Shown here: positions 42,587 through 48,030 of the stretch, piece by piece
How positions within the stretch are numbered: position 1 is the stretch's first letter
Layout of the letters: each line of letters opens with the position of its first letter
Virus record (IMG/VR): IMGVR_UViG_3300041411_000178
Coordinates: 1-64,000 of that record
Strand: one strand, 5' to 3'
Length of the DNA: 64,000 nt
Position numbers and translations under genes: made by a program
Notes under the pieces: model-generated
The model's input: the letters and a program-made list of their open reading frames with translations, nothing else
Databases searched by the model: none
What the model was told of the DNA's origin: nothing

Positions 42587-43969
42587 TTACTCAAAATAGT
42601 CCTTGCTCAGGATACGCAGCACAATGTACAGACACAGTGCCGTGCGTACCAGTTGCACGGTTTGTTGGGTTTTGACCCCAGTACGTTCTTTGACGATTTC
42701 GTCACCCAGGGTTCGGATCACCTTAACGGTATCGTTCTTGCTTCGAGGGGCACCGTAGGCACCGCGCATCTTGATCAAGACGTCATAGACGTTGGTTTTC
42801 TTAATACCATTGGTATGCAGGTACTCAAACATGTGCTGAAGGACTGCATCAGCGAACTGTTTGTACTCCGGCTTCTTCGGGTTGTTGTACATCGTCGGGA
42901 ACTGCTGAATAACATACGCCAACTTATCGCGAGGGCAACCTTCCAGCGCATCCGCAGAGTACTTGATCAACTCGTCCTTGTAGAACGAGGTCTCCTCAGT
43001 GAGGATACGATCCAGGTAGAGACCAAACTGCGTGATCTCTTTGGTCTGCGTCTTCAAAGCCAGTTCGTCACCGAGGTTAACCTTGGCTCCGTCAATCCGC
43101 ACGATGTCAGTTTTGTTCTTGACGTCGTGGAAGACTTTGTTGATGTCGTTAATAGCCCGACGCAAACGGTTCTGGATATCACCGACCATGTAGACGATTT
43201 TCTTGTCGTCATCCATCTTGGAGAAAGCGTCGTAGTGGATACCCGTCTTCGGATTGATAATGAACTCAGCCCGAGCTTCGATCAGTGCACGCCAGCTACC
43301 GTAACGCTTGATGTCGTATTTCAGACTCAAGCGGTTGTAGGTTTCCATCGCCACTTCTTTCCGTGCCATGAACGGATAGTCGTTGTGAATGATCGAGGTC
43401 AAACACTTGTAGTGGTACATCGCCAGGATGTCGATCATGGCCTGGTGTTTGGTGTCCTTGCTCAGACTTGAGCGATTGACCCGATACAGCAGGTACGGAA
43501 TGGTCAGGTTGAAGGTATCACCCACCACACTCCATTCCTTGTTCACCGCTTTGGCTGCGTGCAGGTTTTCTTTGAGTTCCTCTTCATCAACGTCGAAGAT
43601 CTCAGAGAACCACTGGTTACGGTCGGCCGTCGTGAAGGTGATCTTGTGCAAACCCAGATACGGAGAACCGAAGAACTCCATATGACTGACCACGCCTACG
43701 GTCCGGGTTACGAACGAATAGACATAACGGCGAAGTGTCTTGGCCCACTTCTCGTCAACTACCAGGAAATCACCGAACGAGTTGCAGATGTCCAGGATCG
43801 CATGGTTGCTGTCGAAGTTGATGCCGTTGAGCAAAGCCTCAGCACCCGTGACCGACTGGATCTCTTGAGGCTCGATCGGGTACAGGTACAGTCCGCCTTG
43901 AGCGAGGATCGAGTGTTCCTCCAGACCTTCAAACAAACTGAAGATCGAGGGTTCAATGAAAGATGTCAT
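42587..43969 (-). CDS. Conserved jumbo-phage protein
   Basis: 460 aa, TGATG overlap with the upstream gene, conserved position between TerL and PhuZ. Confidence 0.7.
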   Translation of the reverse strand: MTSFIEPSIFSLFEGLEEHSILAQGGLYLYPIEPQEIQSVTGAEALLNGINFDSNHAILDICNSFGDFLVVDEKWAKTLRRYVYSFVTRTVGVVSHMEFFGSPYLGLHKITFTTADRNQWFSEIFDVDEEELKENLHAAKAVNKEWSVVGDTFNLTIPYLLYRVNRSSLSKDTKHQAMIDILAMYHYKCLTSIIHNDYPFMARKEVAMETYNRLSLKYDIKRYGSWRALIEARAEFIINPKTGIHYDAFSKMDDDKKIVYMVGDIQNRLRRAINDINKVFHDVKNKTDIVRIDGAKVNLGDELALKTQTKEITQFGLYLDRILTEETSFYKDELIKYSADALEGCPRDKLAYVIQQFPTMYNNPKKPEYKQFADAVLQHMFEYLHTNGIKKTNVYDVLIKMRGAYGAPRSKNDTVKVIRTLGDEIVKERTGVKTQQTVQLVRTALCLYIVLRILSKDYFE

Positions 43970-44817
43970 CAGAATCTCCTTGGTACGGCACGACGTACGG
44001 CATCAGTCACACGCTGACGGTCACTGTAGGCCATCCGCTTGGTCCATTCCGTAGTGAGGTATTCGTGGTAGTCTTTCCAGGCATCACGATATTCCATGAT
44101 GTCGTCTTTGATGTCACTCAAAGAAACACCGCTACGGATAATCGCTTCCTGGGTTGGTCGACGGCAGGTCCGGTAGATGTGTGCCTTAACGGCCAACTCT
44201 ACCAGGTGAGCAAAGTGTTCATACTGGCGTGTCGAAATACTGCTCAGACCTTCATCGTACTCCAGGATCATCTTGGCCGACATCGAGTAAGTACCCGAAC
44301 TCAAACCAAAGATCACGAAGCAGTTGTTACCGGTCATATGGATGTTGTTGTAGGTCACCGGCATCTGACGGTTGGAGCTGAGGCTGTCCACCAGCGCTTC
44401 AGTCATGTCCGAGACGCTACCTTGTCCACACATCTCGCTGCTGTTAACCGTCATACCCAGCATGCCCGTCGACGAGGTCATCGAACCCAGGTAGATCTCG
44501 GTCACGGAAATGATCTTGCGACCACCGGTAACAATGTCCGGTACGTTTACTTCAATACATGCGTTACCCAGGTCCCGGATACGAGCACCGGTCAGGTCGA
44601 TGAACTCGGTCTTGCCACCGTTGGCATTACAGGCTGGCAGTACAGTACGGTGAATTACTTTCTCACGGATACCCTGTTCCACAGTCGTGTGGTTAACCAG
44701 GTTGTACCAGTTGCCTGCGAAGTTACCATTGGGGGCTTCGAAAGCAAGTTTAAGCAGGTAGTCATCGATGTCACAGTTGGTGACCCGATTGATGGCATAA
44801 TCCACCGCATTACTCAT
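43969..44817 (-). CDS. Conserved jumbo-phage (virion) protein
   Basis: 282 aa; TATG late-promoter-like motif about 35 nt upstream. Confidence 0.7.
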   Translation of the reverse strand: MSNAVDYAINRVTNCDIDDYLLKLAFEAPNGNFAGNWYNLVNHTTVEQGIREKVIHRTVLPACNANGGKTEFIDLTGARIRDLGNACIEVNVPDIVTGGRKIISVTEIYLGSMTSSTGMLGMTVNSSEMCGQGSVSDMTEALVDSLSSNRQMPVTYNNIHMTGNNCFVIFGLSSGTYSMSAKMILEYDEGLSSISTRQYEHFAHLVELAVKAHIYRTCRRPTQEAIIRSGVSLSDIKDDIMEYRDAWKDYHEYLTTEWTKRMAYSDRQRVTDAVRRAVPRRF

Positions 44818-45011
44818 GATAGGATTCTCGATGGGATGAAATGAGGGAAGTCATAGCATCGTATATCTTTTTTCACTTTTCACTTTTTGGAAGGTATCAT
44901 TTCAGGTGGGTTATGGGGATACCCTGTAGGGTAGATTACCCTCTGGCTATAAAACGTCTCAAATCGCTTCTCAGGAGATCGGTGGATAGATATGAAGGTA
45001 GGGTAGGATAT

Positions 45012-45028
45012 TCTTAGGTCTACATTAT
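45012..45028 (+). promoter_or_regulatory. Early promoter (variant)
   Basis: TCTTAGGTCTACATTAT, preceded by GATAT as in other copies. Confidence 0.6.
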
Positions 45029-45298
45029 CTGGTTGATAGGAAATAAAGGTATTTTTCTACTCATTTCTCCTAATCATATACGGAGAAAAGTGGGGAGGGG
45101 GTCTAACAGTAAAACAGCAACAGTTTAGTAAAAGTGTTTAACTCAGTTAGCAACAAAGAAAAGAAACATTACTTATTAAAACTCTCTATGACTGAGGTCA
45201 TGGAGGGGTAAGGGGATATATGCGGGCTGAAAGGTTATTTCTAACCCTAAGACGCATATTCTAGAAAAACTATTTAGAAGTAACGTGAGGAGAGACCT

Positions 45299-45841
45299 AT
45301 GACAACGATTTGCTGGGATGGGAAGAAACTTGTCAGTGATTCACAGGTGACAGCCGGCATGCAGATCTCACCTGGGGGACTGCGGAAGATCTACACCCCT
45401 GAAGAAGGTGAGTATTGGGATGTGAACGGCCATCGTGTTTTGGCTGCTGGCATTTCGGGGGACGGTAAGTCGATTGAATACGTCAGGGAACACCTGCGAG
45501 TTGGTGTGACCTACAAAACGAGAATTGAGGATGTAGACGAACTCAACTTCTCTGCACTGCTGATCGCTGAAGACGGCAATTGCTATCGCTGGGGAATGAC
45601 TAAGCGTCAGGGTCGTCCTCTGATGACAGACATCGTACCACTGCTGCCTCCTACTGCCGTAGGTTCTGGGCAAACCTTTGCACTGGCAGTGATGTCGATT
45701 GGCAAACCCGCAGAAGCCGCTGTACGCGCCGCTATCCGTCACGACAAGTGGTCCGGTGGCGATCTGCAAATCTGGGAAGTCCCACCTAAACCCGCCACCA
45801 AGTCCGTTCGACCAGTGGTTACCGAACCTACACCCGCTTGA
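45299..45841 (+). CDS. HslV/proteasome-beta-like Ntn hydrolase, copy 1
   Basis: N-terminal MTTI, SDSQ, RKI, AVGSG: Thr1/Asp/Lys/GSG pattern. Confidence 0.8.
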   Translation: MTTICWDGKKLVSDSQVTAGMQISPGGLRKIYTPEEGEYWDVNGHRVLAAGISGDGKSIEYVREHLRVGVTYKTRIEDVDELNFSALLIAEDGNCYRWGMTKRQGRPLMTDIVPLLPPTAVGSGQTFALAVMSIGKPAEAAVRAAIRHDKWSGGDLQIWEVPPKPATKSVRPVVTEPTPA

Positions 45842-45856
45842 TCAGGAAAACACATC

Positions 45857-46468
45857 ATGTCAACAGCCGCATTCGACGGTAAACTTCTGGTCACTGACTC
45901 GGCCATCCACACCGGCGGGCAAATCAGCCCCAGTGAGTTCCGCAAGATCTATACACCAGAAGAAAATGAGTACTGGGAGATCTGCGGTGTTAAAGCAATC
46001 GCATTTGCTCTGATCGGTACTCCCATTGTCTACCCGCAGTTCCGCAAGATATTGCAGGACGGCATGGATCACAGTTCTGACGCAACGGTATTTGACGGTA
46101 CATTCGAAGCCATTGTGGTGGGTGAAAACGGCGCCGGGTACCAGATCATCTTGTCGGAATCCAACAAGGAAGGCAAGAAGCAAATACTGCAAATCGTTCC
46201 AGGTACCGGATTCCTTGCCGTTGGGGACGGCGATCAATTCGCGTTGGCTGTAATGTCTGTCGGTAAGTCTGCTCGTGTGGGTGTCAAGGCGGCGATCAAC
46301 CTGTGCATTGAGAGCGGGGGCAATCTCCAGGTATTCGAAGTACCACCGCCACCTGAGACACCTTCTGTGCGTCCTAAGAAGGGGTACCCAACAACCGAAG
46401 AGTCGCTGGCCCAGCTTCGGGAATTGGTCAAGGAAGAAGAGCGTCAGGAAGCCAAAGCCAAGGCGTAA
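45857..46468 (+). CDS. HslV/proteasome-beta-like Ntn hydrolase, copy 2 (variant)
   Basis: Paralog of copy 1 (RKIYTPEE.EYW, FALAVMS.GK); starts MST and has GDG for GSG. Confidence 0.75.
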   Translation: MSTAAFDGKLLVTDSAIHTGGQISPSEFRKIYTPEENEYWEICGVKAIAFALIGTPIVYPQFRKILQDGMDHSSDATVFDGTFEAIVVGENGAGYQIILSESNKEGKKQILQIVPGTGFLAVGDGDQFALAVMSVGKSARVGVKAAINLCIESGGNLQVFEVPPPPETPSVRPKKGYPTTEESLAQLRELVKEEERQEAKAKA

Positions 46469-46477
46469 TTTTCTATG

Positions 46478-46696
46478 CTATGTGAACTCGTGAGTTTGCT
46501 CCTGCTTGAAGATAGTTAGCCCTGGCGTACCCGCGGGAATAGTTTGGAGTCCCCTACCCGCAACAGTTGGTTGTCCCCCATTAACGACCGGCTGTCCTGA
46601 CAAGTTATCGTTGGGAAAAGCTCCACCTGCCAAAGATATTTCCATCGTGCCCAGTCCTCCTAAACGGGGATTGGGTGCGGTGGGACTATTTTGCAT
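46478..46696 (-). CDS. Possible small Gly/Pro-rich protein
   Basis: 72-aa ATG ORF in an otherwise empty gap; weak SD. Confidence 0.3.
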   Translation of the reverse strand: MQNSPTAPNPRLGGLGTMEISLAGGAFPNDNLSGQPVVNGGQPTVAGRGLQTIPAGTPGLTIFKQEQTHEFT

Positions 46697-46856
46697 TTTG
46701 TTTTTTCTTACTCAGTAGCTATATTTTATACTTGCACACGCCGTCCGGTTTTTCTCGTAGCTGGGTTATCCGGAGGGGGTTTATTGGAGGTGGGTCCTAC
46801 TGTCCTTCGGTTTGCAGGTATTCTCACTCACAAGTGTTTAAGTCTTTTCTGAGGAC

Positions 46857-46895
46857 ACCCCCTGTTTGCCTCGTTTGCGGCAGGGGTTCTTTTTC
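46857..46895 (+). terminator. Intrinsic terminator upstream of the PhuZ promoter
   Basis: CCCCTG...CAGGGG stem followed by TTCTTTTT. Confidence 0.6.
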
Positions 46896-46951
46896 ACTTG
46901 TAGTCAGATTCTTAGGTAGTGTTGGCAATGGGTTGACGTCTTGTAAAAAGA

Positions 46952-46968
46952 TTTCAAGCCTACATTAC
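46952..46968 (+). promoter_or_regulatory. Early promoter of phuZ
   Basis: TTTCAAGCCTACATTAC. Confidence 0.8.
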
Positions 46969-47031
46969 CTGTGTGTTGACCATAAACGGTCTAACGAATT
47001 CTTCCAACTGGTAACTCAAAGAGAACTTCAC

Positions 47032-48030
47032 ATGAATGCGAATACTTCTGATCTGGCATATTTCCTCTGCGGTGGTACCGGGATCAACATCGGCGTGGCT
47101 CTGAAAAAGGGTACTCACACCGACAACAACAAAAACGCTTTCTTCGTGGGCCTGGACTCCTCGGACCGCAACAGCTCCAACGATCTGTTCGAAGTCGTGC
47201 AGATGGCCGTTGCCAACGATCCAGACCAGAAAGCCAAGGGCTCGGGTAAAGTCAAAGCGACCAACTACCCACAGGCTGAGCAGTTCGTGACTCAGTTCCT
47301 GACCAAGCACAAGCCGCGCGATTACAACATCATCGTCTGCTCCACCGGCGGTGGTACTGGTTCCATGCTGGCCTTCGTTCTGGCGCGCATGCTGTTCGAA
47401 CGCGATCAACTGGTTGTGCTGTGCTTCGTCAACGACAAGACCTCGCAGGTTGAAGAGATCAACGTCGTGAACAGCTACCGTTCGTACGCATCGCTGACCA
47501 CCCCAGGTTCGCTGAATCGCGTCGTTCCGTACATGGAATTCGACAACACCCTGACCAACACTCGCGGTGAAGTCAACCAGATGATCATCGACAAGCTCGA
47601 TGTGGCCAGCCTGTTCCTGACCAACGCGAACAAAGAGCAAGACCACACCGACCTGAAGAACCTGCTGAACTTCAGCAAGCACTACGGCGTTCCACCGTCC
47701 ATGTCGCGCATCCGCTTCTACGACGAAAACGGCGTGGCAGACTTCAAGGGCAAAGTGCCGGTTGCGGTCTCCTCCCTGTTCGAAAGCAGCGATGCGGTCA
47801 TCCCACGTTTCAACGGCACCGTGATCCGTTCCACCGGCGTGTTCGCTGACGGCGTTAAGCGTCCAAGCAACGCCAACGAACTGCACATGGTCCTGGACCA
47901 CGGCGAGGCTCTGAAAGAGCTGGAGAAACACATCGAAGCCATGGAAACCCGCAAGGTCGAAACTCAATCGTCCTTTACCCAGCAGAAGGATCTCTCTGCC
48001 GGCGCGGACGACAAAGGCTTCTTCCTGTAA
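47032..48030 (+). CDS. phuZ: PhuZ phage tubulin (332 aa; start is ATG 47032, not 46675)
   Basis: CGGTGINIG, GLDSS, GSGK, GGGTGS tubulin signature; start lies downstream of the early promoter. Confidence 0.93.
   Translation: MNANTSDLAYFLCGGTGINIGVALKKGTHTDNNKNAFFVGLDSSDRNSSNDLFEVVQMAVANDPDQKAKGSGKVKATNYPQAEQFVTQFLTKHKPRDYNIIVCSTGGGTGSMLAFVLARMLFERDQLVVLCFVNDKTSQVEEINVVNSYRSYASLTTPGSLNRVVPYMEFDNTLTNTRGEVNQMIIDKLDVASLFLTNANKEQDHTDLKNLLNFSKHYGVPPSMSRIRFYDENGVADFKGKVPVAVSSLFESSDAVIPRFNGTVIRSTGVFADGVKRPSNANELHMVLDHGEALKELEKHIEAMETRKVETQSSFTQQKDLSAGADDKGFFL

What the first reader, a model, noticed from the sequence alone, without database searches (positions are those of the whole stretch)
45299..46468. 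Tandem HslV/proteasome-beta-like pair, one canonical and one altered: possible phage heteromeric mini-proteasome
Seen: adjacent paralogs with DNA-level similarity (AAGATCTAcACcCCtGAAGAA..TGAGTAtTGGGA). Copy 1 has Thr1 and GSG. Copy 2 has Ser1-Thr2, GDG and an added charged C-terminal helix. Both have Pro-rich tails, lie downstream of an early promoter and are next to phuZ; no HslU ATPase is in the window. Known: Ntn proteases use the N-terminal Thr, and 20S proteasomes arose by duplication into active and inactive subunits. Inference: an early self-compartmentalising protease or deconjugase that removes host defence proteins or ubiquitin-like conjugates, or a decoy for host HslU.
Basis: partly seen in the sequence, partly recalled or inferred. 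Interest (0 to 1): 0.75.

Follow-up and report, generated by a model that had tools for sequence, protein, structure and literature searches.

The report
Tandem phage proteasome-homolog (PPH) gene pair
An uncultivated EL-like jumbo phage carries two adjacent, co-oriented genes for miniature proteasome/HslV-like peptidases, one with a complete catalytic site and one with a deliberately kept but rewired site. Related phages carry similar arrays of two or three genes that include fully dead copies, which suggests, but does not prove, a virus-encoded mixed-subunit mini-proteasome.

Summary

- **Copy 1:** has Thr1, Asp17, Lys33, Gly47, Ser129, Asp166 and Ser169.
- **Copy 2:** keeps Ser1, Asp17 and Lys33 but has lost Ile3 (now Ala), Ser129 (now Asp) and Asp166 (now Cys). 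It is still under purifying selection (omega 0.10-0.21), and its active-site half is its best-conserved part.

The duplication is old. The changes accumulated stepwise: Thr to Ser first, then GSG to GDG or GPG. At the same locus (DUF7484, array, PhuZ) relatives carry one to three copies. Ser1 or Gly1 copies arose at least twice and never occur without a Thr1 neighbour.

A hetero-oligomeric, ATPase-independent peptidase is the best reading but is unproven. The early promoter, deconjugase, HslU-decoy and anti-defence ideas have no support.

The parts
45255..45268 (+). Conserved cis element CATATTCTAGAAAA, which contains the palindrome TTCTAGAA. It lies 31 nt upstream of the copy-1 start codon. 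Its function is unknown (operator, TSS-proximal or 5'-UTR element).
   Evidence: It is invariant in six loci whose surrounding intergenic DNA is otherwise unalignable. It is unique in the window and in the whole genome. It is present only in the clade whose copy 2 has Ser1.
45286..45292 (+). Shine-Dalgarno TGAGGAG for copy 1.
   Evidence: Invariant in all six aligned loci, 6 nt before the ATG.
45299..45841 (+). Copy 1: a 180-aa PPH-type proteasome homolog with a complete catalytic set. Residues and codons: Thr1 (45302-45304), Ile3, Asp17-equivalent D14 (45338-45340), Lys33-equivalent K30 (45386-45388), Gly47-equivalent G54, Ser129-equivalent S123 (45665-45667), Asp166-equivalent D149 (45743-45745), Ser169-equivalent S152.
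45779..45838 (+). Copy 1 proline-rich C-terminal tail (residues 161-180; PPKPATKSVRP...).
   Evidence: It is the most conserved segment of the protein among orthologs, at 82% mean pairwise identity. It is shared with copy 2 and with EL ORF015.
45842..45856 (+). A 15-nt intercistronic spacer with AGGA. The two genes are in the same reading frame.
   Evidence: Spacing in the related arrays is -4 to +18 nt, apart from one 503-nt gap in L021. The frame relation is not kept in L011-L013.
45857..46468 (+). Copy 2: a 203-aa paralog with a rewired site. It has Ser1 (45860-45862), Ala3, and keeps D14 and K30 (Asp17 and Lys33 equivalents). Ser129 is replaced by Asp124 (46226-46228) and Asp166 by Cys150 (46304-46306). 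Ser169 is kept.
46337..46393 (+). Copy 2 proline-rich segment (PPPPETPSVRP...).
   Evidence: 91% mean pairwise identity among orthologs. Residues 161-170 are modelled at pLDDT about 94.
46394..46465 (+). Copy 2 charged C-terminal helix (residues 180-203). It behaves as a variable module.
   Evidence: AF2 helix 180-202. In a wastewater strain about 95% identical to the window, 46376-46478 is replaced by 97 unlike letters. Orthologs carry different tails.
46640..46685 (+). A 20-bp hairpin followed by a U-rich run. It is a candidate terminator closing the two-gene unit.
   Evidence: The 46469-46700 stretch folds at -83.3 kcal/mol, z -3.95 against shuffles. There is no Rfam family above threshold.
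43969..44817 (-). Context: divergently transcribed DUF7484 gene (phrog_3179). It is the left syntenic anchor of the array in all relatives.
47032..48030 (+). Context: the PhuZ tubulin gene. It is the right syntenic anchor.
   Evidence: phrog_4733 E 1.7e-74. Pfam Tubulin and TubZ_C_2 give weak hits.

Best explanation
The locus is a two-gene unit encoding paralogous PPH-type proteasome homologs. These are compact, HslV-like N-terminal-nucleophile hydrolases with no propeptide and no helix H2, in an EL-like, PhuZ-encoding jumbo phage.

Host methionine aminopeptidase would expose residue 2 as the catalytic N-terminus. Copy 1 is a complete threonine peptidase: it has the Thr1-Lys33-Asp17 triad, the Gly47 oxyanion hole and the Ser129-Asp166-Ser169 proton relay. 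Copy 2 keeps a Ser1-Lys33-Asp17 triad but has lost the relay (Ser129 to Asp, Asp166 to Cys) and the Ile3 anchor. It is therefore predicted to be an attenuated or re-specialised site, not a dead one.

The two most likely co-assemble into a hetero-oligomeric, self-compartmentalising peptidase. That complex would work without a phage-encoded unfoldase on unfolded or loosely folded protein or peptide substrates in the infected cell. The conserved Pro-rich tails and the variable C-terminal helix would serve as assembly or targeting elements.

What is shown: the fold, the family, the residue inventory, the age and retention of the duplication, purifying selection, and the recurrence of arrays with degenerate subunits. 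What is inferred: catalytic activity, ring formation, hetero-assembly and the biological substrate.
For: Fold and family:
- phrog_1040.
- The family profile hits proteasome beta5 at E 8e-6, aligning the Thr1/Asp17/Lys33 and GSG/Asp166/Ser169 segments.
- AF2 pLDDT of about 90 for both copies.
- Both models have a single helix between the sheets, the signature of PPH/RPC in PMC8665760.

Catalytic inventory and its rarity: among 143 representatives Thr1 is present in 94%, Asp17 in 99%, Lys33 in 95%, Ser129 in 85% and Asp166 in 85%. None has Asp at position 129 or Ala at position 3. The roles of these residues come from PMC4792962: T1S lowers activity by 40-45%, and D166N drastically reduces it (put at about 60% in that paper's discussion).

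Retention:
- The pair is present in L006-L015.
- The downstream copies form one clade (98/94), with Thr to Ser on a 100/99 branch and GSG to GDG/GPG later. The two copies co-diverge.
- Omega is 0.10-0.21 for copy 2.
- Copy 2's active-site half is more conserved than copy 1's.

Hetero-assembly (indirect):
- Spacing is tight, -4 to +18 nt.
- Arrays of two or three genes occupy the same locus, with Gly1 or Ser1+Lys33Arg copies that cannot act alone as proteases. Every such array has at least one Thr1 copy: L017, L029, L030, L035, L036 and L037.
- Nucleophile alteration arose at least twice independently.

No ATPase.
Against: - There is no direct evidence of oligomerisation. No multimer modelling was possible.
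- PPH lacks H2, and Fuchs et al. caution that some new homologs may not form proteasome-like rings.
- Many family members, including EL, SPN3US and the small phages, function with a single copy, so a partner is not intrinsically required.
- In L013 and L014 both copies are canonical, which fits simple subfunctionalisation equally well.
- Copy 2's strongly conserved cleft could mean it is an independent enzyme with its own specificity.
- No expression data could be obtained.
- The substrate and the stage of infection are unknown.
Confidence: 0.5

Rival explanations
1. Subfunctionalised independent enzymes. Each copy forms its own homo-oligomer (or acts as a monomer) and cleaves a different set of substrates. 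Copy 2 would be a genuine Ser1 Ntn hydrolase with altered specificity or chemistry.
For: - Copy 2 keeps Ser1, Asp17, Lys33 and Gly47, and its active-site half is its most conserved part.
- Ser1 is a competent nucleophile in proteasome beta5-T1S (PMC4792962).
- In L013 and L014 both copies are canonical.
- Single-copy members exist.
Against: - Related arrays contain Gly1, Lys33Arg/Asn/Tyr or Asp17Thr copies that cannot be enzymes, yet they are retained and are never found alone. This argues that partnering is the general logic of the locus.
- The loss of both second-triad residues predicts poor turnover.
Confidence: 0.25
2. Non-proteolytic Ntn chemistry. One or both proteins act as a specific ligase, transpeptidase or amidase, connectase-like, and not as a compartmentalised protease.
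For: - The proteasome-like superfamily includes the monomeric ligase connectase.
- PPH and connectase are the only members that lack part of the H1/H2 pair.
- The TM-scores to ring-forming homologs are modest in Foldseek.
Against: - H1 is present, and neither model shows the S3/S4 two-helix insertion that defines connectase.
Confidence: 0.1
3. Hijack or decoy of a host unfoldase. The phage proteins dock onto host HslU (or another AAA+ unfoldase) to redirect or titrate it.
For: - The phage encodes no AAA+ ATPase.
- HslV is the nearest solved structure.
Against: - Helix H2 is absent, and H1/H2 form the face that, in the 20S, contacts the neighbouring ring, so canonical docking is doubtful. This is an inference.
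- There is no sequence match to the HslV models.
- BPH shows that group-I homologs can work without an unfoldase.
- The host is unknown.
Confidence: 0.1
4. Copy 2 is a decaying duplicate with no function of its own.
For: Several catalytic-shell residues are changed.
Against: - Omega is 0.10-0.21, with dN lower than copy 1 inside the subclade.
- It is conserved in at least 7 distinct genomes and co-diverges with copy 1.
- The reading frame is intact and the N-terminal half is highly conserved.
Confidence: 0.03

Closest known systems
[quoted passage not shown] Fuchs, Alva and Lupas 2021, PMC8665760. Equivalent to PHROG 1040, 'peptidase HslV family'.
   Same: - Proteasome-like beta-sandwich core.
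- Thr1/Asp17/Lys33/Gly47 present.
- No propeptide.
- Uniquely missing helix H2.
- Compact size.
- Found in tailed phages.
- C-terminal extensions occur in some members.
- No associated ATPase.
   Different: - PPH was described as about 140-aa single genes. Here the core is about 160 aa plus a conserved Pro-rich tail.
- The gene is multiplied into tandem arrays of two or three paralogs.
- The distal or extra copies carry altered (Ser1, second triad lost) or dead (Gly1) sites.
- I found no description of this arrangement in the searched literature.
HslV (ClpQ), the bacterial HslVU peptidase subunit
   Same: - The mature N-terminus is Thr1.
- It shares the Asp17/Lys33/GSG motifs.
- It is a small group-I proteasome homolog.
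   Different: - No match to Pfam PF00227 or the NCBIfam HslV models.
- Helix H2 is absent.
- There is no HslU in the genome.
- Sequence identity is 15-22%.
20S proteasome beta subunits (eukaryotic beta1-beta7)
   Same: The evolutionary logic is the same: gene duplication giving active and inactive or attenuated paralogs that are retained together. The same first- and second-triad residues are at stake.
   Different: - There are no alpha subunits, propeptides or assembly chaperones.
- Hetero-assembly is not demonstrated here.
- The duplication is independent and viral.
BPH (bacterial proteasome homolog)
   Different: BPH has H2 and a long acidic pore loop and forms homo-tetradecamers. It has no paralog arrays.

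Membership tests
PPH/RPC (Fuchs et al. 2021) | Proteasome-like S1-S11 beta core flanked by helices | tested here: met
   [not shown]
PPH/RPC (Fuchs et al. 2021) | Lacks the second helix (H2) | tested here: met
   DSSP on both models shows a single helix (58-68 or 58-67) between strands S6 and S7. H3 and H4 are present.
PPH/RPC (Fuchs et al. 2021) | No propeptide, so the nucleophile directly follows Met | tested here: met
   Both copies have M-T or M-S at residues 1-2, and nearly all of the listed representatives match the profile from residue 1.
PPH/RPC (Fuchs et al. 2021) | Catalytic triad Thr1/Ser1-Asp17-Lys33 plus the Gly47 oxyanion hole | tested here: met
   Copy 1 has T, D, K, G. Copy 2 has S, D, K, G.
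PPH/RPC (Fuchs et al. 2021) | Direct sequence relationship to the named representatives (WP_042125023.1 for PPH, WP_140207863 for RPC) | not testable with these tools
   The accessions could not be fetched. The link rests on shared features and on 142-160-aa small-phage members matching the same profile.
PHROG 1040 'peptidase HslV family' | Significant match to the family HMM | tested here: met
   E 4.2e-29 for copy 1 and 3.1e-16 for copy 2.
HslV proper | Match to Pfam Proteasome (PF00227) or the NCBIfam HslV models | tested here: not met
   No PF00227 hit for either protein or anywhere in the genome. NCBIfam gives nothing significant.
HslV proper | A cognate HslU AAA+ partner | tested here: not met
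   No AAA_2 or AAA domain in the complete 224-kb genome, and no homolog of the RAY gp116 HslU-like ATPase. Use of a host HslU was not testable.
20S-type heteromeric proteasome | Physical co-assembly of distinct paralogs in one ring particle | not testable with these tools
   Only single-chain prediction was available. The evidence is comparative only.
Connectase | Lacks both H1 and H2, and has a two-helix S3/S4 insertion over the active site | tested here: not met
   H1 is present and there is no helical insertion between S3 and S4 in either model.

The most novel reading that the evidence does not exclude
EL-lineage jumbo phages have independently re-invented the 20S strategy. A minimal, H2-less phage proteasome homolog was duplicated into arrays of two or three genes whose products form one hetero-oligomeric particle. 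That particle mixes a fully active Thr1 subunit with attenuated (Ser1, second triad lost) or dead (Gly1) subunits. This would be the first virus-encoded heteromeric proteasome-like machine. The variable C-terminal helices would act as exchangeable targeting modules.
Probability: 0.35. Interest if true: 0.75.

Novelty: new variant of a known kind. Interest (0 to 1): 0.55.

Why it matters
PPH is a large family, with 800 cluster representatives at E <= 1e-10, and it is widely annotated. Yet it is entirely uncharacterised: nobody knows whether it forms rings, what it cuts, or why phages carry it.

These arrays offer a natural experiment. The same locus holds one, two or three paralogs, with a graded series from a complete site, to a Ser1 site without the proton relay, to a Gly1 site. 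If the subunits co-assemble, this is an independent viral replay of how the 20S proteasome acquired inactive subunits, in a system small enough to reconstitute in E. coli.

It would also add a proteolytic activity to the biology of PhuZ-encoding, nucleus-forming-type jumbo phages. If the subunits do not co-assemble, the pair is still a clean case of Thr-to-Ser nucleophile switching in a family said to use threonine strictly.

Tried and rejected
1. **RAY gp116 lead.** A preprint reports that a nucleus-localised 'HslVU family' protein exists in Erwinia phage RAY. gp116 turned out to be a 569-aa HslU-like AAA+ ATPase, not an HslV homolog. RAY has no PPH, and gp117 and gp118 belong to unrelated PHROGs. 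The localisation result therefore does not transfer.
2. **Expression evidence.** The 'RNA-Seq cDNA' wastewater runs have flat depth and are flagged as probably DNA, so they say nothing about timing or co-transcription.
3. **Early promoter.** The sigma-70 scan does no better than shuffles. TCTACATTATC, shared with EL, occurs once. CATATTCTAGAAAA is unique in the genome. None of these is a repeated promoter consensus.
4. **G51 to Ala as a sign of degeneration.** Rejected, because Ala is common at that position in the family (50 of 143).
5. **Remnant of a third copy upstream of copy 1.** There is none. The window simply lacks the Gly1 gene that L036 has.
6. **Stop-codon readthrough fusion.** The genes are in frame, separated by TGA plus 5 codons. 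The frame relation is not conserved in L011-L013.
7. **Other libraries.** PADLOC, NCBIfam, Rfam and the tRNA scan gave nothing relevant.
8. **Direct PDB sequence search with copy 1 alone.** Only chance hits. The family profile was needed.

Full report
**What is there**

The window is the first 64 kb of a complete 224,004-bp IMG/VR virus record with direct terminal repeats. Two same-strand ORFs lie at 45299-45841 (180 aa) and 45857-46468 (203 aa), 15 nt apart. They are paralogs, with 42% identity over 180 residues and E 9e-44.

The flanking genes are a divergent DUF7484 gene (43969-44817) with a phrog_2921 gene behind it on one side, and PhuZ (47032-48030; phrog_4733, E 1.7e-74) on the other. 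The same order is found in Pseudomonas phage EL (ORF013, ORF014, ORF015, ORF016), but EL has a single copy. The phage is uncultivated. Near-identical DNA occurs in rhizosphere, soil and wastewater metagenomes.

**Family and fold**

Neither protein hits Pfam Proteasome or NCBIfam HslV. Both hit PHROG 1040, 'peptidase HslV family' (E 4e-29 and 3e-16). A profile of 38 relatives reaches proteasome beta5 chains at E 8e-6. That alignment covers the N-terminal Thr1/Asp17/Lys33 stretch and the GSG...D..SGG stretch.

Both models have only one helix between the two sheets, where HslV and 20S beta have H1 and H2. Fuchs, Alva and Lupas (PMC8665760) give exactly this as the signature of PPH and RPC: no H2 and no propeptide. 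[quoted passage not shown] I therefore file the pair as PPH/RPC-type proteasome homologs, not as HslV. I could not compare them directly with the paper's named representatives.

The family is large. An exhaustive profile search finds 800 cluster representatives at E <= 1e-10. I found no experimental study of it.

**The two active sites**

Huber et al. 2016 (PMC4792962) define a first triad, Thr1-Lys33-Asp17, and a 'second triad' in which Ser129 and Asp166 (with Ser169) set the protonation of the Thr1 amine. Thr or Ile at position 3 anchors the Thr1 methyl group. In that work T1S lowers activity by 40-45%, and D166N drastically reduces it (put at about 60% in the paper's discussion).

Copy 1 has every one of these residues. 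Copy 2 has Ser1, Ala3, Asp17, Lys33, Gly47, Asp at position 129, Cys at position 166 and Ser169. Among 143 family representatives:
- Thr1 is present in 134, Ser in 4 and Gly in 5.
- Asp17 is present in 142 and Lys33 in 136.
- Ser129 is present in 122 (plus 11 Thr, and no Asp).
- Asp166 is present in 122.
- Position 3 is I, V or L in 142, and never Ala.

Copy 2's combination is therefore unusual.

**Evolution**

Viral-contig relatives show tandem pairs in most EL-related jumbo contigs, three copies in L021, and single copies in L016, L018, L022, EL, SPN3US, phiEaH2 and the small phages.

In the tree, the downstream copies form one clade (98/94). Its early branches (L013, L014) still have Thr1 and GSG. 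Thr to Ser occurs on a long branch (100/99), and GSG to GDG or GPG occurs only in the window's subclade. The upstream copies form a mirror clade (99/99) with matching topology.

Copy 2 is under purifying selection. Omega is 0.10-0.21 at unsaturated dS, and dN is lower than for copy 1. Its active-site half (residues 1-56) is more conserved than the same part of copy 1, at 73-76% against 64-71%. In both proteins the Pro-rich tail is the most conserved segment, at 82% and 91%. This is a rewired site that is kept, not decay.

**Arrays with dead subunits**

The representatives with Gly at the nucleophile position led to further loci with the same synteny (DUF7484, array, PhuZ-sized gene):
- L029 and L030 have Thr1, Thr1, Gly1.
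- L035 has a Gly1 copy that also lacks Asp17 and Lys33, next to a Thr1 copy.
- L037 has Thr1, Thr1 and Ser1+Lys33Arg.
- L036 is a close relative of the window phage (copy-1 and copy-2 orthologs at about 75% identity). It has an extra Gly1 copy (Lys33Asn, Gly47Glu, Ser129His) lying where the window has only intergenic DNA.

A broader tree places the non-Thr variants in at least two separately supported clades. In every array examined, a degenerate copy sits beside at least one canonical copy. Spacing is -4 to +18 nt, with one exception. A protein with no nucleophile that is retained, and only next to an active paralog, is most simply a partner subunit. This is the main, indirect, support for a hetero-oligomer.

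**What is missing**

The genome has no AAA+ ATPase and no homolog of RAY's HslU-like gp116. In small phages the gene sits in accessory small-gene cassettes without an ATPase.

No expression data could be obtained, because the cDNA-labelled runs behave as DNA. The 'early promoter' is unsupported. The only conserved upstream block, CATATTCTAGAAAA, is unique in the genome. A strong hairpin with a U-run at 46640-46685 may end the unit.

Oligomeric state, activity, substrate, localisation and any link to defence systems remain untested. PADLOC gives nothing.

**Verdict**

The pair is a new variant (paralog arrays with graded active-site loss) of a known but uncharacterised kind (PPH). Best estimates:
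- Fold and family: about 0.95.
- Copy 1 is an active Thr1 peptidase: about 0.7.
- Copy 2 is attenuated or re-specialised, not dead: about 0.6.
- Hetero-assembly: about 0.4-0.5.
- Any specific biological role: 0.2 or less.

Noticed in passing
window 45255-45268: The block CATATTCTAGAAAA (palindrome TTCTAGAA) is invariant about 30 nt upstream of copy 1's start codon in six loci whose intergenic DNA is otherwise unalignable. It occurs once in the 224-kb genome and only in the clade whose copy 2 has Ser1. In L036 it lies between the Gly1 gene and the Thr1 gene.
   Followed up: partly
window 46376-46478: In a wastewater strain about 95% identical to the window, the last ~30 codons of copy 2 (the charged C-terminal helix) and a few bases beyond are replaced by 97 unlike letters. 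Orthologs also carry unrelated helical tails, so this looks like an exchangeable C-terminal module.
   Followed up: partly
window 44818-45254: The intergenic region upstream of the pair exists in two unrelated forms among close relatives (window and L012, versus L007, L009, L010 and L011). L036 shares the window form at 81% identity over 406 nt but carries an extra Gly1 paralog gene after it. This is a mosaic, indel-prone spot.
   Followed up: partly
window 46469-47031: The 563-nt intergenic region between copy 2 and PhuZ is strongly structured: 46469-46700 folds at -83 kcal/mol, z -3.95. It contains a 20-bp hairpin followed by a U-run at 46640-46685. No Rfam family matches.
   Followed up: partly
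window 45839-45859: Copy 1 and copy 2 are in the same reading frame, separated by TGA plus five codons. This holds in the window, L007, L009 and L010. In L011-L013 the gap is 14 or 16 nt, so there is no evidence for a readthrough fusion.
   Followed up: yes
L027 18181-18708; L039/L040 (MT710307.1 106144-107877): Salmonella phage pSal-SNUABM-04 has a second, distant PHROG-1040 paralog (ORF116) unlinked to its ORF1. About 2.4 kb downstream, ORF121 (annotated 'putative DnaA') is a homolog of RAY's HslU-like ATPase gp116. This may be a phage-encoded HslVU-like pair.
   Followed up: no
L028 8078-9164 (RAY gp117, gp118): Two adjacent 179-aa ORFs lie directly downstream of RAY's nucleus-localised HslU-like ATPase. 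They belong to PHROGs of unknown function (6870 and 10877) and show no detectable proteasome-like signal.
   Followed up: partly
L021 6001-8296: This locus has three family members, with a 503-nt gap after the first and a 4-nt overlap between the second and third. The two distal copies sit on very long branches.
   Followed up: no
window 45019-45029 and L001 ~3916: TCTACATTATC is shared between the window and phage EL upstream of their PPH genes. It occurs once in the window, which is within chance expectation.
   Followed up: yes
L035 2309-3001: A 230-aa gene immediately upstream of the Gly1/Thr1 pair in L035 did not match the family profile at E <= 10. It was not examined further.
   Followed up: no
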